A stretch of 64,000 nucleotides of DNA, from the NCBI GenBank assembly GCA_976226885.1, contig OZ320315.1, forward strand, positions 41,044,001 through 41,108,000, given 5' to 3'. Of the stretch, positions 1 to 27,736 are shown one piece after another. Source of the stretch: Iphione sp. A-MEVVRFRX5 (lineage: Eukaryota). How positions within the stretch are numbered: position 1 is the stretch's first letter; each line of letters starts with the position of its first letter. Position numbers and translations under genes: made by a program. Under the pieces are notes generated by a model. That model ran no database searches and had not been told where the DNA came from. It saw only the letters and a list, made by a program, of their open reading frames with translations.

Positions 1-257
1 GAAGCAACAACGTGCAGTGAGGAGGCAAGGGCGGGCAGGATGTATGGAATATACGCCAGTCCCAACGCCACTCTTACGGTGGGGAGCCCCAGCAAGGACT
101 CCAGCCTGGAGTATTGGATGGCTAATGGCCAGCATCACCAGCACCAAGGCCAACACCAGCAGCCGCAGCAGCAGCAGCAACTGAAGCAGCACCAGCACCA
201 GCCCTCAGCCAAGGAGGTCATCTATGCCCAAGGCCATTACTCGCCCGTCTCCATGGT
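1..257 (+). CDS. Partial coding exon (Gln/His-rich, Tyr motifs): either an alternative 5' exon of ena (phase-2 donor at 258) or the last exon of an upstream gene (stop TAA at 259-261)
   Basis: Frame open from base 1: EATTCSEEARAGRMYGIYASPNATLTVGSPSKDSSLEYWMANGQHHQHQGQHQQPQQQQQLKQHQHQPSAKEVIYAQGHYSPVSMV. Mixed CAG/CAA/CAC codons suggest real coding sequence. GTAAGT starts at 258 after ATG GT (phase 2), matching the phase of the ena EVH1 acceptor. An AATAAA at 731-736 keeps the terminal-exon reading possible. Confidence 0.6.
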
Positions 258-3200
258 GTAAGTAGAGGGGAGATTTGCAAAGGGCTGGGAGAGGGCGGGA
301 TTGATATGAGAGTGCCCAAGAGCACTCCAAGTAAGTTCTTGTTTATGTCAGCTAGATGAGGAAGTTCTCCGGCTTTTTGTCACATTAAGTGATTTCCCAC
401 ATGACGGCGTTCAAATACTACTAGCTTGTGCGCTTTTGTATATATTAAAGGTCGCATTCTTAGGTAAAAGTTGGACAGTTACGCTTTAAAAAAAAATGGT
501 GATATATAGCAGTTGAATTTGAGATGCCTCAAGCTGTGTAACTACCAGATTCATTTGGTAGTGCCATGCAAGAAACAGATTATAATGCCTAAGAAAGACT
601 GTACTAGTCCGCCGTGTAGCCAGATCCAGCCATTCTCGGCAACTTTCCTACGAGGACTCCACCATGGAGGCTGAATCGGTATCTTGTTTTAAGCTCAACT
701 TATTTCAGTCGATTCTTAGGATAGCTGTGTAATAAACTTATGGATCTGGGCTTTAACACTTTCATAAGCAAGGCATGCCTAGCATGTGCGCTTTTGCCCT
801 GTTAGAAGGCTTTTAGTAAAGCCGATTCAGTCGATAGAAGCTCGGTAATTCAGACTTGGCTGACTTCTCCTCGATTAAGCGCGATCAAAGGGAAGGGTTT
901 TTAGGTAGTAGACCTGTAACCAAAAAAGATTAAGTGCATGTGATGATAACAATCGCTTGCCTTATTGAAGGCGAATCAAAACAGATGCTACGCAGACCTG
1001 AGTTTCCGTAACAAAACAACTGTTTCCTTTTAGCTTGCCAACTTGCAAACACGTCAAGACCCAGCCAGCACACTACAAGGATGCTGCTGCTGTTTCGATC
1101 TGTGTCGGGGCTTCCCACATCTCCGACTGCGTGGGCCCTGCTTTGTCCCGCTACATGTATATCTCCATTTACATATGCATGTATACAACTGGCCGAATCT
1201 TTTCACCTCTGTGTGTATCTGTTCGGTCCCGCATCCAGTCTCATAAAAGGCCGTCGCTGATGTAGATGCCTTGATATGGTGGTGCCTTGGGCGGTGGGGG
1301 GGGGGGCAGAATAGGGTGAGGACAGACCTGCTGAGGCAGTGTGTCACGGTACGACTCTTTGTTACGGTTACGGCGGGGTTGGGTGTTGGAGGGGGGATGC
1401 TGGCGGGGGTGGGGGTTAGAGTGTCAAGAGAAGCTCGATGGACGACTTGCCAGCTCGGCGTCTGCACTCTGTCCACGTGACCTGTCGTCTGGCGCGCCCT
1501 CTGCCGGTCGTTCGTCTTCACGTCAAGGACGAAGGACGCCAATAGGCAGAGTATGGAAGGCGGGCCATGCCCCAGCCGTCTGTCACCTCCCGGTCCATGA
1601 CCCAACTATGGCCCAGCCATCTTGATACCTCCCTTTAGTCATGCACTGGCCATCCGTCATCTATGTAAACCAGTCATCCTTATGCCTTCTAAGCGTTTGC
1701 CGCGGCTGTCTATTATGCACATACTCCAGCCGTTTTATACGTCCCGAACCATATCCAAAGCATTCGTTTTACTTGCCTACCCTAGCTTCTCGCCTTGCTC
1801 CGGTGATGCTAAGGCGAATCTTTCGTGTGTCCAGTTGAATGTTGTTTGTTCAACACGTATTGATTCTTTACATCTACTGAGTGCACATGAAATTAGATAG
1901 GAAATTCATGTGAGATGTATCCGTTTTTCTCTCAAAACGGACAAGGATGGATTTTTTTTAAACAGCGGTTGGCCCCAGTTTTTATCCGTATCAACGTAAG
2001 ACCGGGTAAACAGACTACCCCTGAGGTACACTTCCACCCAAGCCATGCCGGAGCCATCTGTGACCTTCCTGGCAAATAGCTCGCTGGATCCTTGTTATCT
2101 GTCCCCACCCCAGCCATGTCATGACTATCCGTTAATACCCTAGCCATACCTCTTACACTTATTACCTCCTGAGCCTTCTTCCGCCTGTCCTCTGACCATT
2201 CTGTTGCCACAAAGCTCATTATATCCGTCACACTATGCAATGACGACCTGTTGCCTGCTAGCCATATCGCAGCTCTTAATTACATCTACCTCCTTCGTCC
2301 TTTCTTAGTTATCTGCTGTAAGCCCTCGATATGCCTTCACCATCCGGTACCTCCTTGGCCATGCCCTTGACCTATCCTACGAGCCCACTTCCCTTCTTAC
2401 CCTCTGATCATGTCACATGTACTTATAACTGCCACGGGCATCGAATTGCTAGAAGCACTGGATAGAGCCCGACATAAGCTTCTTTCTCAGGTGGAAAGTT
2501 GACATGACAGAAAGACAGTTGAAAACGATATATTAAGATCTCATTTAAAAGATCTTCACTTGAAATGAATTATACCGCTGTCAACGCAATTTTTGATAAG
2601 GAAGTAGTATTTTGGAAGGCATCAACTGTGTCCATAGAGGTATACTTATATTTCGTATTGAACCAGAGCGAGGGAGCGCAATTGGTTGCAACTAAATTGT
2701 CGGGCATGTCTCTCTCTGGCTTTGAGAAATTATTATTAGTTCAGGTCTTTGGCTGGACATTAAATTCGAATCCTAAATAAAAATCGGTAGTCTTCTGCCA
2801 GGAAAAACTAAAATAAATAAGCTGACCACGAAGGAAAGACGACAAGTGCGGGGAGGATGCAGTAACCGGATTGGGCGGGCTGCAGGCCGGTATTAGTGGA
2901 TGGCAGAGAGGACATTACACAGGGCCGTCCCCCTCAGCCTCCCTGTTTGACGGTTTAATCCCGTACAGTGGGTAATGGTGGGAGAGCCGTCCATGGAGCG
3001 GGCTGGCCCTGCAGATGGCGGGACTCGACCACCGACATAATGCTCGAGATAAGATTGCGGGCCGGAGCACCCCGTCCCTTCCGTCTTCATTCCGTGTCTT
3101 CTAAGTTGATTCTTTCTGCGGAATGTGTTTTCCACGCAATCGCCAAACTCCCATAAGCTCCATTCCGGTCGTCATATTACATTCCAGCGAAGAGCCACAA

Positions 3201-6200
3201 TGGATGTTTTTTTTCTCTCCACCTATGCAGGAGTGTAAATGTGAAGCCGTGACATGGTAGAGGGTGATAAGTAGATCACATGTCGGTACAGGGTAGTGAT
3301 CTGGAGGAGATGGAGGAGTCTCTCATGTGATACATACACACGAGCATGTTTTCATATGCTGATCATGTTGTTGGCTGTTTATAACAGGCAACGCCANNNN
3401 NNNNNNNNNNNNNNNNNNNNNNNNNNNNNNNNNNNNNNNNNNNNNNNNNNNNNNNNNNNNNNNNNNNNNNNNNNNNNNNNNNNNNNNNNNNNNNNNNNNN
3501 NNNNNNNNNNNNNNNNNNNNNNNNNTACACTACCTATATAAAATGTTGCCCAAAAGTAGTCCGGCCATGGGGGCTGCCATGTCATTCTGATGTGATTATA
3601 CCAAAATACATTATTTTTGTTAGTACTTCATGCATAATGATATTGTAGGACAAAAGAAGGATGATTATTCATCTATTGTGTATGTAAAATGTTTAAATTA
3701 CTAAAAACCATATGACATATGTGGCTCTACTTTCTACACAAAGTGGTGTATTCCTACCCCTCTGTTCAGTCAAGCAGAACCAAGGGTTGTAAACTTGGAA
3801 GAGGGGTCAAAGTACAAGGTACTATTTTGCAACCCTCCCTCCCCACCTCTCTTTCTCCCTCTCTCTTGCCAAAGGCGCTTGTATATATATACAATGTATG
3901 TGTGTGTGCGTGTATGTAAAGCGATGCCAATAATCCATTTTATCATATAGGGGCCGTCTATCAAGAGCGGTTCTTTATGGAACCACGAGATTTTCAGCTT
4001 CTGATTACGTTTACAGGGGTGGTAAGACCCGTCAGCTCCCGTCAGCTGTGGCAGCGAATATTTGTCATGCGGAATAAACCAGTGCTTTTTTTGTATACAG
4101 ATGTCCTGTATAATCTCAGATTATTACAAACTACTTTCGATGAAGAGCGGCGACGTAACGGCGCTGCAAAAGAAGTAATCACTATTTTGATAGAAGAAAA
4201 GTAAATTGCACCGTTAAATGGAAGATTGGAACGCCCGTAGTCAGGATACCGATGACAGGTAACAACTAGTAGGGTTTCAGACTCAACGCTGCCTTCCTGT
4301 TTCTGTATTATTAGACCTTCAGTGCTCAGGAGAAGTATTTACCGAGAGGGGAATTGAGAATGCGTTCACTGTTAAATATCTTAAAAAAAAATATTAACCC
4401 GCCAAGGTGCACGATCTTTAGCTCACACGAAGATGACCTTTCTGAGATGTTATAATGAGCCGTGCACCCTGTTCATATTCACGGTACTTTAAGGTGAGCT
4501 CTCGTTTTACCCGTCCTAGACCGGAAAAAATCTCAGCCAAGAAAAAGAAACAACTCCACCTCCAGTAAAGAAGGTGGAGTAACTTTGGCGAAACACCAAA
4601 AAAGAAGTGTGCATTTTTCCTGGTTTTCGCCCGTTCGTACGTCACGAACGGGGAAGGTCGACCTTCCGGAGACATATCTGGTATAGATACACACGGTGGG
4701 ATACAAAGGGAAATCACGGCTGATATGAATTTCCTCCGACATCAACGCTGTACATCAGCAGCTCCGAAACAATGACAGCACTTGACAATAAGCAGCCAGA
4801 TTAGAAAAGTCAAAGGGTTATCTTTGACAGAGAAATGCCGCTCGCCTCTTACTGTCGTTTTGGTCCTGTCTCCCTCTTATTTCATGCAAGTCAACCCGGT
4901 CTGTTGATATCTGCAGGGCAACAGCGAGATTCACCCGGTTTTTCATCGATCGAAAAAAAATGTGAGAGTCGAGGGTAATAGGGTGTTTTTTCCCGTGTTT
5001 ACTATTCAGTGATAGCTTTTAGTGACTGTAATTTGTTTCCGCCCTCCTGGGGCTCCTGCTGTCAACTCGGCCGAATCAGAAAGACCTGCTGGACTCCCAA
5101 AATGTCTTCCCACAAGGACTGGGCGTCTGGTCCGGACAGATCGTCACTCAGAGTGGCGGTGCTAAGGTGCCGGTCACATGACGCAAAGGCCAGGGAGCTG
5201 GTATAATCGGCCTCGTCACTCGAGCGGGGTTACAAAACACTCGCAGGAATGGATGATTCTCGGGAGCAGGCGAAGAAAAATCGCGGCTTTATTCATTGTT
5301 TCGACATAGGACAGAGACGCGGCCGCCCCTGCACTGGGACATAGCTCGCTCTCTCTCTCTCTTCACACAATGCCCTCCAGCTTCCCGTACTACTCGTAAA
5401 CGTCTGGTTCGAAGTGGCCGCGAAGTCGTGTGCGATATATAAAATGTTAACCACCGCAGTACAATGTGTAGAATCGGATTTGAGGCCTGTTTTTCAATGT
5501 GTTCCTGAGTTAGCCTTAGTGTATCTAGCTGTCATTCTACGTAGATCCCCTTACTTACATCTCATTAACAGTGAATTAATTGAATACCCCCAAAAGGCAC
5601 GGCCTCGATGTCAGCAGCACAAATGTGCACCAGGCAGGGTCTCAAGGGGAGCTTGTTATAGCCCACCTGCAAAACTTGACGATGAGTGGTGGGAAATTTT
5701 ACCTGACCGCCTCACTCCCTCGCCCTGGGTGATCCTACGGGTAACACCCACGGGCAACGCATACAAGGTGCATGACATTGTGTAACCTTCATTAAGTACC
5801 TGTCAGAGAGTGTCCCACAGCCACTTTGTCAAAACAGTTCTGGTTTTTTTTTCACTACTGCGGGTCCTTGTGCAGCTACCTTTCCGTTGGATCTTTTACT
5901 GCTATAGGACAGAGCTCTCGAGAGCATCTATATACCAACACACCAGCAGTCTGTACCCACGTTTCTTATTAGTATCTGAACATAACAGCCTAAAACACAT
6001 CCACCTACCCAAAACAAGGTTCAATATTACCTGTCACGTTGTCGTGTCTTTAATGTGTAGGGGTAGACATTGAAAGCATGTGTCATAGGTAGCCTATATA
6101 ACAAAAACTAGACTTGTCGTCAGGCTAAACACAAACAAGACTTCGGGAGAGGTCGTACGAAGGTACATTTACATGTACAAATGTACATCTGTAGCATATA

Positions 6201-9200
6201 CTCTGTTTGTATCATTCAATATTCAAGATCTTTATTCACTTCTCAGTTTCATTCATTTGTGTATGTGATATAGTCTATGTGTGTGTATGTGTGTGTGCGT
6301 ATTTGCCTATGGGTTTGTATGCAACCGCCGGCACTCTAGATGAGTGACAAGTGATGATGACATGGTAGGACTGCTGACCAGTGTCATAATGACAGGAAGG
6401 TCTAATAATAAGATCGGCAGGATGCAGAGCGGTGCGGGCCATGACGTCGGCGCAATGAACCGGCAGCCCAGTTCCCGCCGATCAGCCTACGACCCCCCCC
6501 CCCCCCATGCCTTATTACACCCCCCCACGGCCCCACCTCCCACGCCGTGTGGGCCACCCTTGTGTCGTGACCTTCATGTCCCATGCACAAATTAGCGCCC
6601 GTTTCAGGAGTACTTTGTGTCCGGAGGGGTGGTCCACTCCTGCGGGTCCTGTCAGAGGCAGCTCTAGCAGGTTACAGTGGATGTCAACAGAGGCAGGTGT
6701 AAGGGGCGTGAGGGAGTGGGGGTCAGGTAAATGGGCAGCTTTGGTACGTCGTCTCTCTGCGGCGTGCGGCTAGCAATGGTCTTGTTGTGCAGTCTCTTAG
6801 CTTGAGAACCTCGGCCACACATCAGGCTCTGGATCCCTAGCTCGACTCCCCCACCCCCCGCGCGTCCAACCCTCTTCATCCCTCCGCTTCCACCTTGCCC
6901 TCCTCACTGCCCCCAGGCCGGGCCCCGAGCCGCTCTCCCTGCCCCGACCACGCCTCCTCTCTCCAGCTGGGCATCGTGAGCAGCTCAGGTTGTGACAGAC
7001 CTCCTGGCGTCGAGCAGTTAACACTAGGGGGCGTTTCTCGCGCTACACGGGCTTCCACTTTACCCTTTACATTTAAGTGGCACACATATAGCGGTGTTTG
7101 TGGCTGGCGGGGTCGGATCGGGAAGCCAGAACCGAGAGAAAGTCTTAAAAACGGTAGCTTGAAGACAGCTGCTTGAAGCGTGAGGTCTAGCTGGACAACT
7201 TCTTCGTGGAAAAACAAATGGAGTAGAGATATAGTGAGATCACCCTGGGAAAATTGTTGGGAAATGTATGTGCATATGTATTTAGTGTACTGTAATTTGA
7301 ATGATTTAGATTTCATTTCATTTCATTGTATCTTTACCAGGAACTAGATATTCCCTATCACATAACAGGGGTCTTCCATATCCTCCTGGGGTAGCATACT
7401 ACCATCTATTGTTGAGAATTGAGAGACCAGAATACCCGGGGTTGCCCCCTACTCTTATTCTGAATAGGTTTCTGGGGGTCTTTTTGTGCATAGGGGATAG
7501 AATCCTATACACCCATGTTATTGTACAAATGTATTTGAATAGAAAAGGCTCAGGAATGAACGTACATTTGTATTAATATAAATAATATTCTTTATCGTAT
7601 TATTCACACAAATTAATGACTGGCAAAGGAATAAATATACGGGGGATTCTTCTTACGTTTAACGCATGGACATAACGATATCTAAAGGACTTCCACAGCT
7701 ATCATTCCATTTTCTCTCCTCATCTCTGAATAGGATGGGGGAGTCAGGTTTGAGCAAGGTCAGACAGGTGGGTAATAGTAACAGCGAGACACTTTATCTC
7801 CTGGGACATATCATCATAGTCCCATCAATATTTCGGGAGTGGTCATACTAGGTAGCCTTTTTTAAAAAAAAGAATTAGAAGTACTTTAATTCATTTTGAA
7901 GTGGCCTTATTGGGGGAGAGTGGTCTTAGTGGTCTGCTGTGTAGAGAAGTTTTACTGTACAGAGCAAGTGTGGAAAGAGAGGTAGAGGAAACGATTATGG
8001 AGAGCAACAGTTCGCAGTATTTAATTTTGATAATTTACTCGTTATTTGGTGCATTCTGTAATGTGGCCAAACCAGTTGTTGACATTTTTTCCTTTTTTTA
8101 AAGACTAAATTGTCCGATCAACACTCGTCTGAGAGCATGCGGAAAAATACCATTGTTTTATATGGTACTATACTATCCAAGGAGGATATGGAGGAACACC
8201 TTCTTTTTAGATATCGAGTTTCTGGTTAAAGATACAGTGAAAAAAGTCTTAAAAGGTAATTGCTCCCTTTCTGTAAATACATATGGGAACATTGAATATA
8301 CAGGGTAAGTTGTGCTTTTAAAAAAAAAGTGGTCTTAATTAGGTAGTCTTTAAGTCAAGGTTGTGATAAGCTACATCTATCAGTGTGAAACAAATATCGG
8401 AAACGAACAGGCTAATTCGACATTTTAAAGTATATACACGGATAGCGCTTCAGCCTTGGTTGTATTGTAATTAGTGAATTTAGTAACAGGTACACTTATC
8501 CAGGCACTAACAACTGGGTCACAAAGTTGTATGTATTAGTCAGTTAAGAATTTTAAAAAAAGACATTGTCATTTATTTCGGTTTATTCCATGAGGTTGAT
8601 AGTGTTACAGGAAGCAGGAAACTGTAAGCTCCATTGCAACAAGTGCTGCCGGGAATAAAATAGGTCGTAGCCATGATAGGTTACAATGAGAAAAAACTGC
8701 GTGTTATTTGCATCATTTTCTGCACCTGGTCTCAGTGATGAATAGCTCAAGGGGGTGTATTTTGTGGACTGCTGGCTAACAATTTGACGTTGATGCGGTC
8801 AAAAAAAAGTCTGACATTACCGTTAGCATGTTGACAGACGTTGTCATAATGGATTACCCACAGGAAATATGGTACTGTCAACACTGTCATGACAGCAGCA
8901 GGGTCCCTTGAGCCATGCTGCAACTTTATCGGTTTGACATTCAGCTGAGCAAACTAAAGTCAACTGTCGTCAGTGCAGTCACATACGTTATACGAATTAC
9001 CTACCGGGGAGGGAGTGGTATTTTTTTTTAACGAGGCGAGGAACGATTTCGTGTGCGTTGTACCTTTTATGATCCAGCATGGCCAGTCTTGCTTGAGTAA
9101 ACTTTCGTAGAGGATAACATTATTCTTGCTGCCAGGACATTTGTTTTAAAGGCCAGCTATGTGCATGCCCCAGGCAGTCTATGATTACCAATTGGTTTTG

Positions 9201-12200
9201 ATGTTAAATAATCTGGCAATTTTTTGGCGATAATTAAATGTTTTCCCTTTGTGTCATTAACTTAGTCAACATTGCAGTGTTCACTAACTTATGTGTGTAG
9301 CCCCGTTATGATAAAGTTTTCGTTTTCGTCTTTATATCAGGAGTCAAAATATTGTTGTCTCATCCAGTCTTAGTCTTAATTCACTCACTGAAATGTAAAG
9401 TAATTTATTTTACCCCAGTTGCAAATACATGTACGTTTACATGTACATGCAGATCGCCTTCGCTACTGATTTTCTTTTCCTTTATATGTGCATGTAGTAA
9501 CAAACGCACCGAGAAATATATAAAAAAAAAGTTATTCGCAACATTACATATACATGTACATGTAGGGAATAATGTGCATTTGAGCAGTTAAAAGTGATTT
9601 TTTGCCCCTTTCTTTCTGAACTTTAGGGATACCAGGTGTTTGACGTTATTGCCAACATTACGTAGAGGAATATGGCGAGTGTCTGTGATATAACGGAAAG
9701 GCATTTCCCTGATTACCCAACTCCACTTCCCCAGCCCCTAACCACCGTCCCAAATCATGGCGTGCTCCATCGACCAATTGTATGTCCGGTTTGTAAATGT
9801 CTGATAATGCTGCCTTGACTCACACATCCTTTGCACTGACTGTCCTACTGTGTATAGGCCCGCCAAGGCAAGGAAATCTGTTTCAGCTAGGTCAACTAGC
9901 CGACGGCGTTCACTTGTGATACAGGAAAGTTTACTTTGACATTCATGCCCTCAAGTTTGGTCACGCACGCTCTCCGTATTACCTCATCTAGTCATCTTGC
10001 AATAAGTTAACGCCATAGGCACGGTCTGCTGTTGCCTTGGAATGGCTCTATACACGTTCTCCTCCGTTCGTCCAGATGCCAAAAGTTCGCCACTAACGTT
10101 CAAGTGATCCATGTTTACCGTTCAAGTGTAGCATTATATGTATGTATAATGTATGTAGAATATAATATATGGGTGCCTGTGTCTGAATTGGGAGTTTCCC
10201 ATGCTCCTCAAAGCCCATTCTGGTATAACCCTACCCCCTCTTCCTATTCCCCCCCCCCCCCGCGTCCGACCATCCACCCACAGAGACTCCCGCTTCAAAG
10301 CATTGGGAAATGGTAATGTGAGAATTTCCCACTAGGTGCGCTCCTGTTCACTGAGCATGTCAAAGTTCACGACCCCTCTCATCAGGCAGCGGCATGTACA
10401 GTCTGAGTTCACGTCATGTCTGTTATAGTTACCGGTATATTTTCGATGTATGAAGGACTGGCCCGGCCAGTTCTCACAACTCGCCCCCTTCCCCTTTACT
10501 CGTCACATCACCGGCTAGCGCCAGCTAAACCCAATGTAAATAACAACGCCTTCTGCTTATACATACCCTTGCGTCGTTTCAAGAAATTATCCTACAGTTT
10601 GGACCGGACATCGTACAGAAAGTATCATTCTTCATTTTCTTGCCTAGCCAGAAAACGTCCCCGCGCTCCCTCCTGTGCCTCTCCCCCGGAGTTCTCCTGC
10701 AGGCGCCCGGCCCATGGGCCACATCCATCAGACTAATGTGTGCTGGGTCCGTCGGCAGCGGTCTCTTGGCGTTCTCCTCCAGACCGTGTCGTATGAAGCC
10801 ATGTCACGCTGACCAGGCAGAATCCCGTACGGCCCTAAATAAATAACGACCACATTTTATGTCCACACCACCTGAACGCATGGGTCAGTGGCGACGTCTT
10901 TGTGGGTTTGTGTATGTGTGAGTGTATGTGTTTGTGTGTGTATTTGTGTATGGTACTTAGTACGTGTAGAGGAAGGACGTTCAAAAGACTGGAGGCGGTC
11001 CCCCCCGGGGTGGTGGTCATTGTTACCTCTGGGTGAACATGTACAGGTCACGGTGCTGTAGTTGGAGACAAAAGGAACTTGTCTTACTTCCACCGTGATG
11101 ACCTCTGTGTTTCCTCGAGGGTAGTCGCGAAAGCGGATCCTTCCTACCTTCTTTGTAACCAACTCAGGATAGAGGTGGGTGTTTCGAGGATCACTGTGGA
11201 GGCGGGATATGTGTGGGGTAGAAGTCTATTTATAGGACAAACAGGCTTCAAACCCATGGTCTAAGGCGAATGAGGCTAGTGCCGATAATTGGCATCAGGG
11301 GGCAGCACGGGTGGAGGAAATTCAAGGTGGAAAATCGGTCAGGGGTAGGCCGGGTTACGACTGTCGAGGATTGATTGAGCTACTAACACGAGTGCACACA
11401 CACTCCAGAGCTCTGCATTCATACACAGACGAACATGTATACATACGTACCCACATGGACATTTATACAGAAGCATCATCCACATAATTGCACATAACCA
11501 CGCCTGGATACCTCAGTCGGTGTAATCATCCAACACATGATGTACCCTGGCTGTGTTTAGTTAAATAGGCAGCGGGGGGATCCCGTAGGCATCTGTCTCG
11601 GTGATGTAGACCTACATCACAAAGGGCGCTCGTTTGTCTTAGGTCGGAGCTTCCTGACAAGCGCTACGACCATCTGACACCCCTGGCGCTGGACGTCATC
11701 ACTTCTGGACGGAATGTTCACACGAGCCATTTGACCCGTCCCACTGCTTAATGCCAAGTCCACGCTGTGTGTGGCCTCGTTTTACTTGTGTTTGAATTTC
11801 ATCAGTTGAATCTGGCTTTGCGTTATGCGTACATTTAAAAATGAAAGTACCAAAACATAGGCTCTTTGGAGAGTTGGCTGGGTTTCTCTTTTGGAATTTA
11901 AAATGAAATGATGCTGAAATACCTTTCTCGTCCAGTACATGTACATGTAATAGGTGCCATGTGATAAGACAATATCAATCTATTGAAACAGTGCTAACTC
12001 TTCTATACACACGTGCTGCAGAAAGTAGGAGCTTATCTGATGGATACATTACATGCATATTCCTTCCAGTTGGGCAGCTGGTTGATGTATTTGTAGAAAC
12101 TTGAAATAAGTGGTAATGTCTACAGATGATAACAGGCAAGGCCAACTCCCTGTGCCGTGGAAGTCCCTTAAATTTCATACCGTCCAGTTTTAAAACAAGT

Positions 12201-12748
12201 GCAAGGAGATGGTGGTGGCTACCAGCTAGTAACTTGAGACCCTCTTGGCTGCTCAAATGAGTGCATATTGACCAGATAATTGACTCAATGGCTGGGAGTC
12301 CATTTGTGGAGCTGTCCGGACAAACAGTCAGCTCCGCCGGGAAACGTGTTCCCCACTCATCGGTCACTTTGCCCTCAAGAACACATGCTCCCTCACCTAA
12401 CCTTTGACCCCGCCGATCTGCTCAGGAATACGACGATCTGAGGGAGGCCCCTCCTCCACACGCGGAGAGCTGCTCTAAGGTAACATGAGCTCGTCGAGAG
12501 GCCTCCACAGCAGCACGCCAGAGGGCGGCCAAGTAGCTCCGATCGTCTCGTCCGCAGAGTGTTTGGCTACGGTTGAAGGGATGCCCNNNNNNNNNNNNNN
12601 NNNNNNNNNNNNNNNNNNNNNNNNNNNNNNNNNNNNNNNNNNNNNNNNNNNNNNNNNNNNNNNNNNNNNNNNNNNNNNNNNNNNNNNNNNNNNNNNNNNN
12701 NNNNNNNNNNNNNNNNNNNNNNNNNNNNNNNNNNNNNNNNNNNNNNNN

Positions 12749-12806
12749 ACTTTCTCTCTCCCTCCCGCCTCCACTGTCTCTTCTCTCTCTTTCTCACTCT
12801 CTCACC

Positions 12807-12880
<74 letters not shown>
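12749..12880. repeat. Compound (CT)n/(CTGT)n microsatellite
   Basis: Seen directly; adjacent to an assembly gap. Confidence 0.95.
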
Positions 12881-12883
<3 letters not shown>

Positions 12884-13958
12884 GTTTGAGTACCTAATCA
12901 AAGACGCTGAGCCTGCCACCATAGGGCACCTGTCTTGATTGTCCAGACAGCCATAGTGGACTTCCGTTGTTCTGACTATGCCCGTAATAACATCTTCAGA
13001 GACTGACTAATGTTTGCACTAGTCTTGTGCCGACTAATTATATCCTTCTCCTACTCATGTAGCACGATGCATTAAGAGCAGCTGGAGACCGCCGCGGGGG
13101 GGGGGGGTGAGGGGGGAGGGGATGCAGCGGGCTTCCGCGTCTGTGACACGAGAAGGCGGTCAGTCCGATACGTATTAATGCAATTTGTGTCGTAACTGTT
13201 ACACGGGGGGAAGCTCGTCGTCATCATACTTTGTGTGCCAATTCGGGGAACATAAATGTCAGATCCATATCATATAGCGTGTAGGGTAAGCACGGGTGCA
13301 CTAAAACAGCCGCTGTAATGGTATTACTGTGACGGGGGCCTTTGTGAATTGTAGATTCATATCCATCATGTCAGCGTGCCATTATGGTAACGCGTTCACG
13401 AAAGATGAGACCCTCCTTCCATATTGAGCGAGGTGGTGATGGTGAAGAGGTTGGTGTATTTCCCCCAAATATGACATACTCCTCTTAGGTAATAGTTATC
13501 AATTAGGAGAAATACGGCCGGGGGGGGCGGGGGGCATTTTAGTCACCAATGCCGCGATCCTGGCCATATCTCTGCGCTATCTAGAGGTCAACCCCCCCCC
13601 CCGTTGGTACCCCGCCTTAGTGGTACGCCAGGTATCTCTAGGAAAATTCGACACTGCTGTACTCAAACTGCATCTCTAACAGGACACAGGGCATCCTCTT
13701 GACCCATTCTTGACCTCGCGACTCCAGTGGCCAGGAGTGGAGACTGAACTCTGCCAGGTGGCCAGCAGGTGACCAGAGCGAGGCTGACTGGGAGCCGTGA
13801 CATGCCCTACCTGTCTTCAACGCCCCCTTTTGCAAGAAATGTGAGTTATCGGGTAATGAACCTGGCGGAAGGGGAGGGCAAATCAGGGACCTTCCCCTGC
13901 AGACCACAACTACTTGTTGGTGTTCCTTCTCGTTGCCTCACTTTTGCTCGCTCGCCCG

Positions 13959-14042
13959 CTCACTCACTCACTCACTCACTCACTCACTCACTCACTCACT
14001 CACTCACTCACTCACTCACTCACTCACTCACTCACTCACTCT
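13959..14042. repeat. (CTCA)n tetranucleotide microsatellite
   Basis: About 20 perfect CTCA units. Confidence 0.95.
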
Positions 14043-14703
14043 CTGCCACACGCTCTGTCTGTCATTNNNNNNNNNNNNNNNNNNNNNNNNNNNNNNNNNN
14101 NNNNNNNNNNNNNNNNNNNNNNNNNNNNNNNNNNNNNNNNNNNNNNNNNNNNNNNNNNNNNNNNNNNNNNNNNNNNNNNNNNNNNNNNNNNNNNNNNNNN
14201 NNNNNNNNNNNNNNNNNNNNNNNNNNNNNNNNNNNNNNNNTTACGAACACATACACATTGAGTGCAGTGACCATATATTTGTGTTTTTCCCCCATCTCTT
14301 CACTGATGTCTATATAAAGGGACAGGGTGTGTTTATTTGTGTGTTCCTATTGCAACGATGACAACATAGGATCCGTTAAGTTATTTGGCGTGATAGGAAG
14401 CAAATTGTTCATTCAGTCATGTTTATTAACGTATGGTCACATGAAATCATTAGGAAGCGAAGATAACAGGTTATCCATTGGATCATCTCCACCCATTGAC
14501 ATTGCTGATGTAAGCCGTGTAATAAAAAATGTGAGTTTCCCTTCCATCAGCATAATTACATGCCACTTCATCTAAAATATTTCATTAGATTTTCCGCGTT
14601 GCCAAGAATGGTAAACAATCGACTGTGCACCTTTATATCCTTCTGATTCTCATATCGATTGTGGACCTAAAGTTGTGGACACGCAGGCAGGAACACACTC
14701 GCG

Positions 14704-14704
<1 letters not shown>

Positions 14705-14740
<36 letters not shown>
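14705..14740. repeat. (AC)n microsatellite
   Basis: Seen directly. Confidence 0.95.
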
Positions 14741-14741
<1 letters not shown>

Positions 14742-15320
14742 TGTATACATGTATGTACATACAAGTCATGCACAGGCTACACGACGATACAACGCATGTC
14801 GCATTAATAATAGCCACACCGAATGTACTGCAGCGAGACGACTCATCAGTTCTGCTCTGAGTCACTCGCCAGTAGTAGATCAGTGGTACCAGGCACCTGA
14901 CCCATGACTAGTGGGGAGGGAGGCAGGATGATCCAACAAGTATCTGAGCATCTCAGGTGACTCAGTCTCTACCTGTAAGGCGTCTTCATGAGCAGGTAAG
15001 GTAGTGAATCAAGAGCTGGTGACCTGCGTGCTGAACACCTCCTGGAGGAAGACTCCAGCACCGCGCAGATAATTCACTCGCTCAGTATTCGTGGGATGCG
15101 ACAAAAGATTAGATGGGGTGTACCTGGTGTAACTATCGCGCAACCTATATACGTAGGGGGTGTTTAATAGAGAGGTATACGGGACTCACGAACCTGAATG
15201 TTTTGGGGTATAGATTTCTAGGAATGTTTGCCCTGTGTAATGGTAATGACAATAGTATTTGTTGTTTAGATGTTGCCGGGCGTAACCAGAAACCACTGGT
15301 ATAGAAATACTCGACTTTAA

Positions 15321-15394
15321 TATTTGTCAAAACATCAGCAAACGTGGGCATACAGTAGGGCAATCTTTCGAGTGGGTACCACAGCTTTCTTCAG
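15321..15394 (-). mobile_element. Decayed hammerhead-bearing repeat related to the 37.9-kb insertion
   Basis: Minus strand CTGAAGA-A-AGCTGTGGTACCCACTC-GAAA-GATTG with an imperfect stem II. The flank tatttgtcaaaacatc resembles tatttgtcaaacaacatc next to the 37.9-kb copy. Confidence 0.35.
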
Positions 15395-16689
15395 TGTCTT
15401 CGGTAGAGGGTAATGATCATAAAAATTATCAACGCTCAATCATTTGACAGTTCTGTATTTTAAGAACAAAGTCTTCTGTTTCCTGCCGTGTGGTGAAGAC
15501 AACGAAAAGACAAAGAAAAGGCTACGAAGGTTTTTTTCCCCCCCGAAGTAGTAAGGACACTGTATACCCCTTTGGCTTGATAGTATAGTGTGCGGGGCGT
15601 CCCCTGTCAGCTGCACTATTGACGTGGCGCCTCCTAGCGGCGACTCGGCGTGTGTGGCAGCTACTGCCGTTTGGCGGCTGGCTTGCAGATCAAAGCATTG
15701 GTTGGGGGGAGGCGTATCATCCGCCTGAACACCTGTACCGCCCGGTGCGATCAGGTGGACTGCAATGCCACGGGGAGAAACTGGAGGGGCGTTATGTGTA
15801 GTATGTATGTTTGCGTGAGTATGAGTAGTGGGCGCTTAATAGATGTGTTCGTGCCTCTGTACATGTGTAGAAGATCGTGTTTACCTCGGGTCCCTAGTGG
15901 CAGGAGTCCGTAGGTGGAGAGGGACATACATATGGGAGGCAGCTAGGCCCAGTTGGATGGGCAAGGGAAGAGGTACACATGCACTTACATGTATACACGC
16001 ATGTATATATGTATATTGGAATCCCTCATTCCGGATATCCCTCTTATATCAGTACACGTACATATCACAGTGTGGACAGGGAAAAGACAGAACCAAGTCT
16101 AAATTTATGTTTAAATATTCCTGCTATACCGGACACCCACTATATACGTTTTTACAACGAGTTAAAGCACATTTATATTTTTATTCGGGCTTATTTCCGT
16201 TGCTTTTGATAATGTATTTGAGCAATTACTTGAAGGCAGCGCTACCATTACAGTTAACTCAGCCCACTGTACAGTACTGAAGGTACATGTAATACGCTGC
16301 GCACGATTATGGCGATTCGAGAGTTGTTAGCTACTAGCGCTGGTTGACCTCCAGTCCGTGTCACTGGTCATGTATATGTGATGAGTGGTTCATGGTTAGT
16401 CGGCCCGGCATCTGTATTTTTACGTGTTCCGGGATTAAAGAGACGGATATTCTATATATATTTATGGCGCCATAGGTTTGTCACTAGTGTAAAGGATTTT
16501 TTTTTAGTGTAAAGGAAGCAAATACTCGGGTTTTACCCATATTATCTGGATACCTGTGACACATATATTGCCCCACTTATTTTATAGTTACTGACATTAT
16601 TACCGTAAACCTGTCTGTTTATGCACATCCTCGTGCTACAGTTGAACACATGTGACAGAGTGAATGTGGTTAGTGAGTCGGTGAGTTGG

Positions 16690-17900
16690 TGAGCGAGTGC
16701 ATTTGTGTCGCTCCCCTTTTTCGTACCTCTGACCGCAAGGCACAGTTCCGCGTGCGTTTTCCGCATTCGGGCCTAGATTCTCTACCACAGGCCGCCTGGT
16801 TCTCCACCATTGCACAGTCTGTGTTGAAGAGGAGCGGCCGATGGGCCACTTTACTGGCCGCACCGCGTCTGCGTAGGAGTTCGATGGTGAACGGAAGAGG
16901 CGGGGTGAGCATGGACTACAGCAGCTCTTCCTGCTCAGATTAGTTTTTGGACGTTCCAGCTAGTAGGGAAGGATAAGCTCAGTAGCAGTAGAAAATGCAC
17001 AGTCACCGTAATTGCAGTTAAAAGAAGAGGAGCGAACAGCAGTAAGAAGGAACAGCCAGTAGAACAGGCCCCCCAGTACATCTAGTAGGGCCTATAGCGG
17101 TATTAGTAGACTGCATCCTTCATTGGCCAAAGCTGGCATCTGCATTGCCTGTGTGAGCAGGTGCTTGGGCTGTAACCACCCCACCCCCACCCCAACCTCT
17201 TCGTGCAGCTGTTGTTTCAGCAGAAGCAGCAACAGATGCAGTAGCAGCAGCCGAGGCGCCGGGAGCTAAAACCAGGCCGCCCATAGAGTGAGGAGTGAGT
17301 GTAGTCACGGTGGAACAGACCGATACCCATCACCGTCTTCAGCTGAGTGGGCTAGTCCGCAGCAGCAGAAGCAGCAGCAACAGCAGCAGCGGCGGTGTCA
17401 GCAGCAGCAGCAGCAGCCGCCAGCAGCGTTGTGCATACGGCCAGCCAACGCTGACAGTGTGCGCTAGACGTGTCTCATGTACATGTACATGGTACACGTA
17501 CTGTAGTGGCTGCAGTATTTTAAGGTCGGTGGTAGCAGCAGCAATAGACTAGGATTGAGGAGATATTACCAGAAGCAGGAGGAGGAGGAGAACGGTCATC
17601 TCATCAAAGGACTTTCTCCGGAGAGGGCGGTCTGCTGGGTTCAGTGAGTAGGGAGGGGTCTCCCTTCAACCCCGCCTGCTGTCACTGCCGCCGTCACTAC
17701 CGCCGCTGTCACCGGTCGCCCCCGCTCCCCATCCCCGGCCCTCCAAGGCTGGTGACCGCATTCAGCCCCTTTGCCTGTCAATTTATATACTTCTCGCATC
17801 TCGCCAGGCGATCATGGAGGACAGCGCGAACGAGCTCAGCTCCCTGGGCATTGTCAGGTAGGCATCACTAGGGCATGTCAGTCGTGGCTTAAGACTGGGG
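16690..17900. promoter_or_regulatory. CpG- and CAG-rich island, probable alternative promoter/5' UTR
   Basis: High GC and CpG density, (CAG)n runs at about 17355-17430, ends at a candidate first exon. Boundaries approximate. Confidence 0.45.
17814..17857 (+). CDS. ena: Candidate alternative first coding exon of ena (MEDSANELSSLGIV-S)
   Basis: Kozak-like context gatcATGG, 44 nt (14 codons + 2), donor CAG|GTAGGC. Lies at the 3' edge of a CpG/CAG-rich island. Splicing to 37212 is in frame. No transcript evidence available. Confidence 0.45.
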
Positions 17901-18758
17901 TCGGGCCCGGCATATCAAGGTTAAGCCTCACCCCGCCCACTGTGCATCCTAGTGAACATTTACATGTACAACCAAGAAGAGATTCGGTTAACCTGTTGTA
18001 GCTACATGTATTAGATTAGTCAATACTACCATCAGGTGGACTCATTTACTAAGAAGAGCAGTATTAATTTCAGCATTCAGATACATGTCCACATTCACAT
18101 TGTAGAGCGTATATGTATAATGAAAAGGTCCTCCTGATTCCACGGATCGTGGAAAGTATGCCCAAATCCATTGTTTACTGTGCTGGCCAAGTAAAAACCG
18201 TGTGTCGAAGATCTCCCGTGTTACTTTATGCCCATGTGTACACTTACGTTTTTCCATCTGCCGGTATATATGCGATTATTGCTNNNNNNNNNNNNNNNNN
18301 NNNNNNNNNNNNNNNNNNNNNNNNNNNNNNNNNNNNNNNNNNNNNNNNNNNNNNNNNNNNNNNNNNNNNNNNNNNNNNNNNNNNNNNNNNNNNNNNNNNN
18401 NNNNNNNNNNNNNNNNNNNNNNNNNNNNNNNNNNNNNNNNNNNNNNNNNNNNNNNNNNNNNNNNNNNNNNNNNNNNNNNNNNNNNNNNNNNNNNNATGGG
18501 GCACACCACCAGCTCATCTGATAAGAGACATATCTGCCGACCTATTGTTTGCTTGGGTTCCTATTTTGGATGCAGTCGTGCCGAGGGTATCATGTAGTCG
18601 CTTATGGCTGGCTCGGTTCGGCTGCCCGATCAATAGGAGGATCAGGATTGATCTCTCTATCTCTTTGCGTCGGTATTAACCCTGCTAACCCGAGTACTGA
18701 TTGGGGATGTTACGGTCGCAGAGGGATCGATACTTGCGCTCTCTACTCACTACATGCA

Positions 18759-18760
<2 letters not shown>

Positions 18761-18818
<58 letters not shown>

Positions 18819-18850
18819 TCCCTCTCTCTCACACTCACACACACGTACAC
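18761..18850. repeat. (TC)n microsatellite grading into (CA)n
   Basis: Seen directly. Confidence 0.95.
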
Positions 18851-19990
18851 ACTCTCATAAACACGCATGAAATCACACTAACTCACGAATGCAAACATAC
18901 GCATGCACATAATGTATGTCTCAAATGAGCATTTAGCTGTGTATGCGAAATTTACTGACCGGCGCGAATCGATTACACACATACGCGCGTACAGCAGAGT
19001 GTATGTGTCATAACCCCTACCTTATTTACCGACCCCCCCAACCCCCATCCCACCTTTCCTACACCCACCCTCCTCATCTTGTTTGAGTCATCAGACGTGG
19101 ACCACCTTGAGCAGATTGGGAGTCCCTCAGTCTGGCTCAAAGCCCACATTCCCTTCCCTCTAGTGGCTGTTACCATCTCGTCTAAAAACATGTACTTCAA
19201 GACGGTGTGGTGTAACACTGTGACAAGCTGTATAGCGGCGTAGCTTGGTTATTTTTAGGGAACAGGGGACAGAGTAGGATGTCGGTTCCAGTTGTGTTGG
19301 CACAAGGGGAGGGGGGAGGGGGAGTTCACCATTGTGTTGCATATTAGCCCATTATGGTGCCAGCCAGCCAATCCGTTGATGCATACTAGACGCCAGTGAC
19401 TCATCAGGACAGCATCGATTCTCATAGAGGTCGTCACCCTCCTTGTAAGCCCCCCCTCCCCCCACCATCCTCCCACCCACCCGCGACATCGTCGCCCTGG
19501 TCAAATTCCCAATTTGAACTCCATACGTGACCACTGTGATATCTACCAATTACCTGGGTTCTTGTGATTCTCTGCGGGATTGAAAGGTTCGTCAGGGCCT
19601 CCTAGTTTAGCAAAAGTGCAAGTTCGGCTTTGATGTGATCGCAGCGTGCGCTTTTGGAAGCTGGCTGGGCGGGGCTTGTGGGAGGGGTATGATGAGGGTG
19701 CAGCTCTGCTATTATACAGGTGGGGGTGAGTCACCACGCCACCTGCAGGTCACACCTCGAACTAGCGTGACCGTCCTCACTATCATTAGTGTAGTCGTTC
19801 GTAGCTTTCGTCTGGCTGTCAGTCTGTCCTCAGTCATACCACTTAATTCTCGTATTAATCTGTTCTCTGCAATTTCATCTCGTTGGCTCCTGTTTCTCCA
19901 TTGCTCCTCCTTATTTCTACACGGTATTCCCTCATGTACCCCGTTATCTGTCTTGTTACTGGTTGTTCAGTCGGTGACTTCCCCCCTGCT

Positions 19991-19998
<8 letters not shown>

Positions 19999-20073
<75 letters not shown>

Positions 20074-20083
20074 TCTCTCTCTC
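19999..20083. repeat. (CT)n microsatellite
   Basis: Seen directly, with a few CC interruptions. Confidence 0.95.
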
Positions 20084-26000: not shown

Positions 26001-27644
26001 ACTCATCTCCTGATTGTCATTAGAGTCTCTGTGTCTGACCCCTCCCCGCCGTCACGTTGTTTACGTCTGGTGATTTCACATNNNNNNNNNNNNNNNNNNN
26101 NNNNNNNNNNNNNNNNNNNNNNNNNNNNNNNNNNNNNNNNNNNNNNNNNNNNNNNNNNNNNNNNNNNNNNNNNNNNNNNNNNNNNNNNNNNNNNNNNNNN
26201 NNNNNNNNNNNNNNNNNNNNNNNNNNNNGGACCGTGTCTCTCGCGGCGGACATCTCTTTCTTCTTCCTTCTCATCTCGGATAACAATAACCATGTGAACC
26301 CATTTTGACCAACAGTGAATTTGATCGCATCAACAGATGGTGTAATATCCTAGGCGGCCATTAAATGATTGCGTCTATTGCCCTAGGGAATGCATTCGAC
26401 CCAGTTTTAGTTCCACATAAAATTATCAGCACATTGCGTTATCATTAATCGTTGGTAAATTAAATGGACTGAACTTTATTTTATTGTCGACTATGATGCA
26501 TTTCTTCGTGTGACTTTTGCTTCTTTTTAGGCCTGACCTGGTTATGGTGTAGGACTGACTGCCAGAAGGTAGATGCCCTCCTTTCAGAAAAGAGGTGCCC
26601 TTCACCTGTTAACTTCTGTACTCGTATATCGGGTAAAACTAACCCTTTCAAAGGTCGGGAAATTTGGGATATTGAGGACAGACGCGTCCTATTGTGGGGT
26701 AATGACGGATGCAGAGTGCGTCGGGGGGGATGATCTGGGTTAAGGGTGGGATGAAGTAATGGATGTGGACTGAGGAGGGTTTGCGTGTGTAGTAGTGATA
26801 GAGTTATCCACCAGAGGGACCCATGTGGCGGAGGAAGTGGGTTGATTCCCGCGAGATTCAGTCATCGGACAGGTGGAGCGTGAATGCCAGTCCGGTTTCG
26901 GGGAAACATCCTTAGTCAGAACGATACCAAACCCTCCCTTTGCNNNNNNNNNNNNNNNNNNNNNNNNNNNNNNNNNNNNNNNNNNNNNNNNNNNNNNNNN
27001 NNNNNNNNNNNNNNNNNNNNNNNNNNNNNNNNNNNNNNNNNNNNNNNNNNNNNNNNNNNNNNNNNNNNNNNNNATACATTATATCTACTAGGGAGTCAAG
27101 CAAAAGGGAACACATCACGAAATAAATGAATGCGGCAGGGTAGAGAGAGAGAGGAGCCCCTTTTTGCTTAACTTGGCAGAAAGCCGAGGTTTTCACATCC
27201 GTGAGCCAAGTTTGAGTGTCTCTGGAGGCTCTGACTGTCCACTGGATTAGTCAGTTGTGAACGTGGCAGCTAATCAGAAACACTCTTGCGNNNNNNNNNN
27301 NNNNNNNNNNNNNNNNNNNNNNNNNNNNNNNNNNNNNNNNNNNNNNNNNNNNNNNNNNNNNNNNNNNNNNNNNNNNNNNNNNNNNNNNNNNNNNNNNNNN
27401 NNNNNNNNNNNNNNNNNNNNNNNNGGGGGGAGATCACAGTAGTATGTAAGTGGGTTCGGAACACGAGGATTTCCCACACACGAGACCAAAAAAGTATATT
27501 TAAATTGTACTCGGTCGTGCATTATGAGATATGAAAGGTGACTGTCATATTTTCAGGCAGTTATATATGATGAAATCCTAAGGCGTAGACATGTAATCAA
27601 CCCATCTCCCTACTAGTCACCCCTACACGCAGTGAACATACCAC

Positions 27645-27647
<3 letters not shown>

Positions 27648-27736
<89 letters not shown>

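What the first reader, a model, noticed from the sequence alone, without database searches (positions are those of the whole stretch)
1..263. Apparent terminal exon may be an Abl-site-bearing N-terminal exon of Ena
The ORF looks like a C-terminus ending in a class I PDZ-type motif (SMV*). However, the stop TAA lies inside a perfect donor (ATG GT|GTAAGT), and a phase-2 donor starting GTAA always creates such an in-frame stop. Spliced to 37212, it reads ...[19 protein letters not shown] in frame with EVH1. The exon contains GIYASP, matching the Abl preference I/V-Y-x-x-P (compare Abltide AIYAAP), plus VIYAQ and a Gln/His tract. Drosophila Ena is an established Abl substrate. Inference: an isoform-specific, tyrosine-phosphorylatable N-terminal module about 37 kb upstream of EVH1.
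Basis: partly seen in the sequence, partly recalled or inferred. Interest (0 to 1): 0.7.

Follow-up and report, generated by a model that had tools for sequence, protein, structure and literature searches.

The report
Ena first exon with tyrosine-rich extension
This stretch is most likely the first coding exon of the animal's single Ena/VASP actin-regulator gene; it puts a conserved, unstructured, tyrosine-bearing 71-residue tail in front of the EVH1 domain that normally starts the protein, but the splice and any phosphorylation are still unproven.

Summary
Window 40-258 is an ATG-started 73-codon ORF. Its TAA (259-261) lies inside a perfect donor, GT|GTAAGT. The donor is phase 2 and fits the phase-2 acceptor at 37211|37212, which opens the EVH1 domain.

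New evidence:
- A diverged copy of the exon sits on a metagenome scaffold (L013). Similarity starts exactly at the ATG and ends 3 bases past the TAA.
- In-frame dN/dS is 0.27, against 1.2-1.4 in the other two frames. All indels are multiples of three.
- Both copies have an ATG-free leader and a nearby in-frame upstream stop. So this is a start exon, not a terminal exon.
- The last full codon, ATG 253-255, sits where Mena and other Ena/VASP proteins start (M-x-E). This looks like the gene's ordinary exon 1 with its reading frame extended 71 codons upstream, rather than a separate isoform-specific module.
- The [IV]-Y-A-x-P motif, which matches the Abl preference, and all five tyrosines are conserved. 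The Gln/His tract is not.

No RNA evidence was reachable, so the 257-37212 junction, isoform usage and phosphorylation are inferred. The result is an ordinary gene with a lineage-restricted N-terminal extension, of modest interest.

The parts
1..39 (+). 3' end of an ATG-free 5' leader. The ATG-free run extends 243 nt upstream of the window, 282 nt in all. An in-frame TAA lies 39 nt before the start codon.
   Evidence: P about 0.005 for 282 nt without ATG; 4 of 374 local ATG-to-ATG gaps are that long
40..257 (+). Coding part of Ena exon 1. It runs from ATG 40-42 to the phase-2 exon end at 257. It encodes a 71-residue extension plus M72 and two bases of V73.
   Evidence: orthologue L013:748-945; dN/dS 0.27; similarity confined to the stretch from the ATG to 3 bases past the TAA
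46..63 (+). G-I-Y-A-S-P (residues 3-8), G-V-Y-A-T-P in the orthologue. Matches the Abl-type substrate consensus [IVL]-Y-A-x-P; once phosphorylated it would be a pYxxP motif.
   Evidence: consensus as quoted in PMC10340426 and PMC13733861
130..201 (+). Gln/His-rich low-complexity tract (residues 31-54). Its length is not conserved: it is 16 codons shorter in the orthologue.
   Evidence: the CAG/CAC-type DNA matches many unrelated places in the genome
217..231 (+). V-I-Y-A-Q (residues 60-64), E-I-Y-A-T in the orthologue. A second conserved I-Y-A motif, without Pro at +3.
253..255 (+). ATG at the position of the canonical Ena/VASP start codon. M-V-|E-H-S-I here corresponds to M-S-E-Q-S-I in Mena.
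   Evidence: the first residue of exon 2 aligns with Mena residue 3; annotated spider Ena fragment P0050 starts MSEQSV
258..263 (+). Splice donor GTAAGT holding the in-frame TAA (259-261). GTAAGTA is identical in the orthologue.
258..37211 (+). Inferred intron 1, 36,954 nt. It contains repeats and masked N runs, with no Pfam-recognisable ORF and no exon shared with relatives.
37212..37377 (+). Ena exon 2, the first half of EVH1. It has a phase-2 acceptor and a GAG|GTGAGT donor.
40768..40933 (+). Ena exon 3, the second half of EVH1 ([17 protein letters not shown]...).

Best explanation
Window 40-257 is the first coding exon of the single Ena/VASP gene of this genome.

- Start: translation begins at ATG 40, the first AUG after a long AUG-free leader.
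- Product: the frame runs through 71 codons of a lineage-restricted peptide with no confident predicted fold. The peptide is rich in Tyr, Gln and His. It reaches the ancestral start codon (ATG 253) without a stop.
- Splice: the exon is spliced at GT|GTAAGT (257|258, phase 2) to the conserved phase-2 acceptor at 37212. The protein therefore reads ...YSPVSMV-EHSIV... into EVH1.
- Rest of the gene: a Gln-rich exon follows near 43.5 kb, a Pro-rich/GAB exon near +74.7 kb, and the tetramerisation exon at +80.6 kb.

Shown: coding constraint on the peptide, a start-exon signature, donor conservation, phase compatibility, and single-copy status of both exons.

Inferred: the junction itself; that the extension is a docking or regulatory tail beside EVH1; and that Tyr5 in [IV]-Y-A-x-P is phosphorylated by an Abl-family kinase to make a pYxxP SH2-binding site. 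I give that last step about 0.25.
For: - Anatomy.
- EVH1 identity: Pfam WH1 E=4.9e-11. Mena 1EVH residues 3-57, E=1.3e-24. The junction therefore falls between canonical residues 2 and 3, and ATG 253 is the canonical start position.
- One relative among 1.84 billion representatives: P0001, 70% identical, ending at the same SMV. Its scaffold L013 keeps ATG...ATGGT|GTAAGTA.
- blastn similarity runs only from the ATG to 3 bases past the TAA.
- dN/dS is 0.27 in frame against 1.37 and 1.23 out of frame. Differences by codon position are 10/11/20. Fisher p=0.0009.
- Every offset between the blastn segments is a multiple of 3.
- The 12-14 codons between the upstream in-frame stop and the ATG are unrelated in the two species.
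- ATG-free leaders of 282 nt and 193 nt.
- Out-of-frame ATGs at 44, 125 and 224 make leaky scanning to ATG 253 unlikely.
- The ag|T acceptor read as S-E-x-S-I recurs in most of the 110 animal exon-2 fragments returned.
- Only one ATGNNGTRAGT lies on the + strand of the window.
- The peptide and the EVH1 exon are each single-copy in the genome. VASP_tetra has a single hit on the same strand at +80.6 kb. A Pro-rich/GAB exon lies at +74.7 kb.
- AlphaFold2 gives mean pLDDT 50 and pTM 0.14, so no fold is predicted.
Against: - No transcript, EST or annotated protein joining the peptide to EVH1 could be found or reached. The word search with the peptide was blank. The exon-2 search returned only short, mostly genomic fragments. 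The JGI metagenome scan was blank.
- Only one orthologue exists, on a 1-kb scaffold that cannot show linkage to EVH1.
- Three relatives with longer contigs have no copy of the peptide within 10 kb upstream of their exon 2. The extension is therefore narrow in distribution, or their intron 1 is also long.
- The exon side of the donor (GGT) is non-consensus.
- A 37-kb intron leaves room for unseen exons or a nested gene.
- Openness of the frame alone is not significant (12-15% by shuffling).
- The Abl reading rests on a motif match only.
Confidence: 0.65

Rival explanations
1. Canonical Ena exon 1 in which the working start is ATG 253 (M-V-E-H-S-I...). Most mRNAs would then start inside or downstream of the upstream ORF, or ribosomes would skip ATG 40. 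The extended form would be a minor or conditional isoform, or the upstream frame would be translated mainly for a regulatory purpose.
For: ATG 253 is at the exact canonical start position and is conserved in L013. Other Ena/VASP proteins start there (numbering; P0050). Transcription start sites are unknown.
Against: - The peptide upstream of ATG 253 is under purifying selection at the amino-acid level, and conservation begins at ATG 40.
- The leader before ATG 40 is ATG-free, whereas three out-of-frame ATGs lie between 40 and 253.
- ATG 253 has T at -3, while ATG 40 has A at -3.
- Because the frame is continuous, anything initiated at ATG 40 on a spliced mRNA is an extended Ena.
Confidence: 0.17
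2. A separate small gene. Either a stand-alone 73-residue protein that really ends ...S-M-V-COOH (a class I PDZ-ligand-like tail), translated from an unspliced or differently spliced transcript, or the first exon of another gene nested in the 37-kb interval.
For: The TAA is in frame and conserved. [ST]-x-V at a free C-terminus fits the class I PDZ-ligand pattern (textbook rule). No RNA evidence ties the exon to EVH1.
Against: - The stop is part of a perfect GTAAGTA that is conserved beyond the TAA.
- The exon ends in ATG+2 nt in the only phase that fits the EVH1 acceptor, at the canonical start position.
- No Pfam-recognisable ORF lies in the interval, and no exon is shared with relatives there.
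- AATAAA at 731 occurs at chance frequency.
Confidence: 0.12
3. The last coding exon of an upstream gene, ending in a PDZ-binding SMV tail (the reading the first reader set aside).
For: A possible acceptor (gtgcag) lies at window 12-17, and the frame is open from 38 nt upstream of the window.
Against: - In-frame stops lie 13 codons (window) and 15 codons (L013) upstream of the ATG.
- The codons between those stops and the ATG are unrelated in the two species.
- Similarity starts exactly at the ATG.
- The 40 kb upstream holds no open frame longer than 221 codons; these frames were not scanned against any family library.
Confidence: 0.03

Closest known systems
Canonical Ena/VASP proteins (Mena/ENAH, EVL, VASP, short Drosophila Ena)
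   Same: - EVH1 domain 80% identical to Mena over exon 2.
- A Pro-rich region with a GAB-like motif.
- A VASP_tetra coiled coil.
- The intron after the second codon, in phase 2, read as S-E-x-S-I in most of the 110 animal exon-2 fragments returned.
- An ATG at the canonical start position.
   Different: In the canonical proteins EVH1 begins at residue 3 (M-S-E...). Here a conserved in-frame ORF adds 71 residues before that methionine.
Long annotated isoforms of Drosophila Enabled with extra sequence N-terminal to EVH1 (from my memory of FlyBase/UniProt; not verified here, and literature searches found no description)
   Same: An Ena protein whose EVH1 is preceded by an extension of unknown function, in an organism where Ena is linked to Abl.
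   Different: No sequence similarity was seen: phmmer over 1.84 billion representatives hit only P0001. The fly extensions are, as I recall, much longer and come from alternative upstream exons. Here the extension is contiguous with the canonical start codon in the same exon.
Abl-family phosphorylation sites in Ena/VASP: VASP Tyr39 (IYHNP) and Mena Tyr296
   Same: [IVL]-Y-x-x-P context. Tyr5 here (I-Y-A-S-P, or V-Y-A-T-P in the relative) also has the preferred Ala at +1 and Pro at +3 (PMC10340426, PMC13733861).
   Different: Those sites lie inside EVH1 or after the Pro-rich region and were shown experimentally. This one lies in a new N-terminal tail and is only a motif match.
N-terminal extension by an upstream in-frame start codon (alternative translation initiation, a general mechanism)
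   Same: The frame is continuous from an upstream AUG through the ancestral AUG, and the extension is under its own purifying selection.
   Different: Whether both starts are used here is unknown.

Membership tests
Ena/VASP family (gene as a whole) | EVH1 (WH1) domain | tested here: met
   PF00568 E=4.9e-11 on exon 2. Mena EVH1 1EVH E=1.3e-24. Exon 3 carries the second half.
Ena/VASP family (gene as a whole) | C-terminal EVH2 with a tetramerisation coiled coil | tested here: met
   PF08776 VASP_tetra at 48.1 bits (cut-off 25.8). It is the single hit in the genome, on the same contig and strand, at window +80.6 kb. That it belongs to the same transcript is inferred.
Ena/VASP family (gene as a whole) | Central proline-rich region followed by a G-actin-binding motif | tested here: met
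   An open frame at window +74,698-75,300 holds long Pro runs followed by GGLAAALRGAQLKKV. This was judged by eye only, with no profile test.
Ena/VASP family (gene as a whole) | EVH1 at the extreme N-terminus (start M-x-E) | tested here: not met
   The canonical ATG is present (253-255). It is preceded by 71 in-frame codons conserved at the protein level and starting at ATG 40.
First coding exon (as opposed to terminal exon) | Conservation begins at an ATG, the leader is closed and unconserved upstream, the leader is AUG-free, and a functional donor lies at the 3' end | tested here: met
First coding exon (as opposed to terminal exon) | Observed splice junction to exon 2 | not testable with these tools
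No RNA data were available for this genome. The length filter of the word search excludes full-length proteins.
Abl-family kinase substrate site | Sequence consensus [IVL]-Y-x(2,3)-[PF], with Ala at +1 and Pro at +3 preferred | tested here: met
   I-Y-A-S-P in the window and V-Y-A-T-P in L013. Consensus as quoted in PMC10340426 and PMC13733861.
Abl-family kinase substrate site | Phosphorylation of the tyrosine by Abl | not testable with these tools
   Needs a kinase assay or phosphoproteomics.
Class I PDZ-ligand C-terminus | [ST]-x-hydrophobic at a free carboxyl end | tested here: inconclusive
   S-M-V precedes the TAA. A free end exists only if the conserved donor is not used. The evidence favours splicing.

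The most novel reading that the evidence does not exclude
The tail is a lineage-specific phosphotyrosine switch placed directly on EVH1. An Abl-family kinase phosphorylates Tyr5 in [IV]-Y-A-x-P, and perhaps the other four conserved tyrosines. This creates pYxxP docking for Abl, Crk or Nck-type SH2 domains next to the domain that targets Ena. Recruitment of Ena would then be controlled from a module that no described Ena/VASP protein has. In addition, intron-retaining transcripts of the same exon would yield a 73-residue peptide with a PDZ-ligand-like end.
Probability: 0.15. Interest if true: 0.55.

Novelty: new variant of a known kind. Interest (0 to 1): 0.33.

Why it matters
Ena/VASP proteins are textbook examples of a fixed EVH1, Pro-rich, EVH2 layout with EVH1 at the very N-terminus. 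Their tyrosine-kinase regulation (Abl with Ena, VASP Tyr39, the recently proposed Tyr16 switch) acts on or near EVH1.

A conserved, selected N-terminal tail carrying an optimal Abl-type motif would be a natural experiment. It would show how kinase input to EVH1 targeting can be added by simply moving the start codon upstream.

For annotation there is a practical lesson. A phase-2 GTAAGT donor always mimics a stop codon, so first exons of this kind can be misread as C-terminal exons or missed altogether. The finding remains a lineage-restricted variation of a well-known gene, not a new system.

Tried and rejected
Searches that came back blank or uninformative:
- Pfam on the 73-residue peptide: nothing (DUF2574 at E=0.16 is noise).
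- Word search of 5.8 billion proteins with window:1-258: no candidate. The length filter means this says nothing about full-length Ena proteins.
- phmmer over 1.84 billion representatives: one true hit, P0001. The other three hits are bacterial repeat proteins matching 'G..WM..' by chance.
- P0001 is a singleton cluster.
- An exact look-up of the window's peptide in assemblies found nothing.
- JGI metagenome scan with the two-sequence alignment: 115 pattern matches, none confirmed.
- tblastn of both peptides against three relatives' loci (up to 10 kb upstream of their exon 2): only Gln-run matches.
- tblastx of those loci against the window: only exons 2 and 3 are shared.
- Own genome: no paralogue and no retrocopy that could have preserved the junction.
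- Ten long intron ORFs gave no Pfam hit.
- The 40 kb upstream shows no open frame longer than 221 codons.
- Literature searches for N-terminal extensions or long isoforms of Ena found nothing relevant.
- AlphaFold2 of the peptide gave no fold (mean pLDDT 50). The alignment has only two sequences, so this is weak support for disorder.

- Exons were searched separately, by reference.
It was redone from references.
- Several exon-2 hits (P0043, P0045-P0049) carry the vertebrate ENAH sequence and could include human-derived contigs. I did not fetch, save or compare their contigs.
- The masked N runs in the window were left alone.
Full report
**Where the window lies.** The window is G000:C4:41044001-41108000 (+) of a 1.18-Gb genome in 89 contigs. 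Other notes of this scan call the genome an annelid. I did not test that.

**Observation.**
- Frame 1 of window 1-261 is open and ends ...YSPVSMV followed by TAA.
- Reading 1.5 kb further upstream (L001) shows an in-frame TAA 39 nt before ATG 40-42. The ORF is therefore exactly 73 codons.
- The TAA (259-261) lies inside GT|GTAAGT. With the exon ending at 257 the donor is phase 2.
- The acceptor ...tctctgcag|T at 37211|37212 supplies the third base of a Val codon. The frame then reads [16 protein letters not shown]....
- That peptide is an EVH1/WH1 domain (PF00568, E=4.9e-11; Mena EVH1 1EVH, E=1.3e-24).
- A phase-0 use of the neighbouring GT (ATG|GTGTAA) would run straight into TGA, so only the 257|258 donor is compatible.
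AATAAA occurs at chance frequency.

**Is the ORF coding?**
- phmmer against 1.84 billion representative proteins found one real relative, P0001. It is 70% identical, covers the query end to end, and stops at the same SMV.
- P0001's only contig is a 1,007-bp scaffold of an ENA metagenome assembly (L013). There the exon reads ATG 748 ... ATGGT|GTAAGTA.
- blastn between L013 and the window locus finds similarity only from the A of the ATG to 3 bases past the TAA, the end of the shared GTAAGTA. Nothing matches in about 750 nt upstream or in the 56 nt available downstream.
- Over 57 aligned codons the differences fall 10/11/20 on codon positions 1/2/3.
- Nei-Gojobori dN/dS is 0.27 with dS 0.73. The same aligned nucleotides read in the other two frames give 1.37 and 1.23.
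- Synonymous against non-synonymous gives Fisher p=0.0009.
- Every offset between the blastn segments is a multiple of three.
- Frame openness by itself is not significant: 12-15% of shuffles stay open.
- The peptide is single-copy in the genome. Only its CAG/CAC tract matches elsewhere. It is therefore not a repeat-borne ORF.

**Start exon or terminal exon?**
- In both species an in-frame stop lies 13 to 15 codons upstream of the ATG.
- The codons between that stop and the ATG are unrelated in the two species.
- The DNA before the ATG is free of ATG for 282 nt in the window (Poisson P about 0.005; 4 of 374 local gaps are that long). It is ATG-free for 193 nt in L013 (P about 0.08).
- ATG 40 has A at -3.
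- These are the marks of a 5' leader and an initiator codon, not of a terminal exon.

**Does it belong to Ena?** Direct proof would need RNA, which I could not reach. The indirect evidence is consistent.
1. The first residue of exon 2 aligns with residue 3 of Mena. An annotated spider Ena fragment begins MSEQSV (P0050). The canonical first exon therefore contributes ATG plus two bases. The window's exon ends in exactly that, ATG-GT, conserved in L013.
2. The word search with exon 2 returned 110 short proteins. Most are genomic exon-2 ORFs from many animals that read ...S-E-x-S-I, the translated 'ag|T' acceptor. The phase-2 intron at this spot is therefore ancient.
3. ATGNNGTRAGT occurs once on the + strand of the whole window, at 253-263.
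4. The GTAAGTA is conserved beyond the stop codon.
5. The genome has one EVH1 exon of this type and one VASP_tetra hit, on the same strand at window +80.6 kb. A Gln-rich exon lies near 43.5 kb. A Pro-rich exon ending in a GAB-like GGLAAALRGAQLKKV lies at about +74.7 kb. This is one large (over 80 kb) bona fide Ena/VASP gene with no second candidate partner.
6. Nothing gene-like was found in the 37-kb interval. No Pfam hit came from its long ORFs, and no exon is shared with the relatives' loci apart from exons 2 and 3.

The exon is best seen as the gene's ordinary exon 1, with the reading frame extended upstream from the ancestral ATG (253) to ATG 40. It is not a separate isoform-specific module. 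Out-of-frame ATGs at 44, 125 and 224 make leaky scanning to ATG 253 inefficient on mRNAs that include the whole exon. A short form would need an internal transcription start. Whether both forms exist is open.

**What the tail may do.**
- AlphaFold2 on the two-sequence alignment gives no fold (mean pLDDT 50, pTM 0.14). Together with the composition, this suggests a disordered tail.
- Conservation is concentrated in four short blocks: MYG[IV]YA[ST]PN, LTVGSP.K, EYWM.NG and [VE]IYA.G.YSPVSMV.
- All five tyrosines are invariant. The Gln/His tract changes length by 16 codons.
- Tyr5 sits in I-Y-A-S-P (V-Y-A-T-P in L013). The general Abl consensus is I/V/L-Y-X(2-3)-P/F (PMC10340426), with preference for Ala at +1 and Pro at +3 (PMC13733861).
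- The strict I/V-Y-A-x-P form is unlikely by chance in five tyrosines (my estimate is about 0.2-0.3%). The loose consensus is not unlikely (about 18%).
- Once phosphorylated, the site would be a pYxxP motif of the kind bound by Abl, Crk or Nck SH2 domains (established knowledge).
- Ena was discovered as an Abl substrate (Gertler 1995, cited in PMC13733861). VASP Tyr39 is the experimentally confirmed Abl site within EVH1. Tyr16 is a reported EVH1 phosphosite attributed to another kinase. Both affect targeting (same papers).
- A kinase-regulated tail next to EVH1 is therefore plausible, but it is inference only. I give it about 0.25.

**Limits and what was left out.**
- The word-search tool only sees proteins 0.55-1.75 times the query length. 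Full-length annotated Ena proteins, which could show the extension, were out of reach.
- I built no joined model and ran no junction-spanning pattern.
- Some exon-2 hits carry the vertebrate ENAH sequence and might derive from human DNA. Their contigs were not fetched.
- Masked N runs were not touched.

**Verdict.**
- Confidence that this is a conserved, ATG-initiated coding exon: about 0.85.
- Confidence that it is Ena exon 1 spliced to EVH1 and yields an N-terminally extended Ena: about 0.65.
- Confidence in the Abl-site reading: about 0.25.
- Class: a new variant of a known kind, an Ena/VASP protein with a selected N-terminal tail. Interest is modest.

Noticed in passing
L019:7430-8794 (+), about 420 nt upstream of that relative's EVH1 exon 2 (L019:9236-9401): A close relative (exon 2 is 93% identical) has a 454-codon ATG-started ORF rich in Gln, His, Glu and Arg. 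Near its end lies AC|GTATGT, a phase-2 donor that would also be in frame with its EVH1 exon. The ORF has no Pfam hit and no similarity to the window. It could be a different, long N-terminal Ena exon in that lineage, or an unrelated intronic ORF.
   Followed up: partly
window 37210-37216 and proteins P0005-P0060: Most of the 110 short exon-2 'proteins' from metagenomes and genomes of many animals read ...S-E-[HQTV]-S-I. This is the translated ag|T acceptor, and it shows that the phase-2 intron after codon 2 of Ena/VASP is very widely conserved.
   Followed up: partly
beyond the window: G000:C4:41118698-41119300 and 41124575-41124655 (+): The rest of the Ena gene lies outside the window. A Pro-rich exon with a GAB-like motif is at window +74.7 kb, and the VASP tetramerisation exon is at +80.6 kb. 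The gene therefore spans more than 80 kb.
   Followed up: partly
window 43477-43719 (+): An open frame with PPQHVAPPPAAPPQQ, a run of 14 Gln and ...NGPPDPQ. It resembles a Gln-rich stretch that follows EVH1 in L019 (11162-11347), so it is probably the next Ena exon.
   Followed up: no
L001:300-390 (1.1-1.2 kb upstream of the window start) and window 12-17: A CT/GA-rich stretch ends in AAGG|GTGAGA, and a gtgcag lies just before the start codon. This could be a non-coding exon and a 5'-UTR intron, which would place the promoter more than 1 kb upstream. This is pure sequence reading with no support.
   Followed up: no
L013 (ENA ERZ23495071, scaffold REYS20-1_SAMN12239304_METAG-scaffold_282900): The only orthologue of the exon comes from animal DNA carried in a microbial metagenome assembly. 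Other close EVH1 exon-2 copies come from similar assemblies (WANG22-1, ZORZ22-1). Host or animal DNA in metagenomes was the only comparative material reachable here.
   Followed up: no
window 3397-3525, 12587-12748, 14067-14240, 18284-18495, 25586-25731, 26082-26228, 26944-27073, 27291-27424, 28562-28717, 36480-36698, 59274-59427: Eleven masked or gap N runs (1,763 N in all), ten of them inside the inferred intron 1.
   Followed up: no
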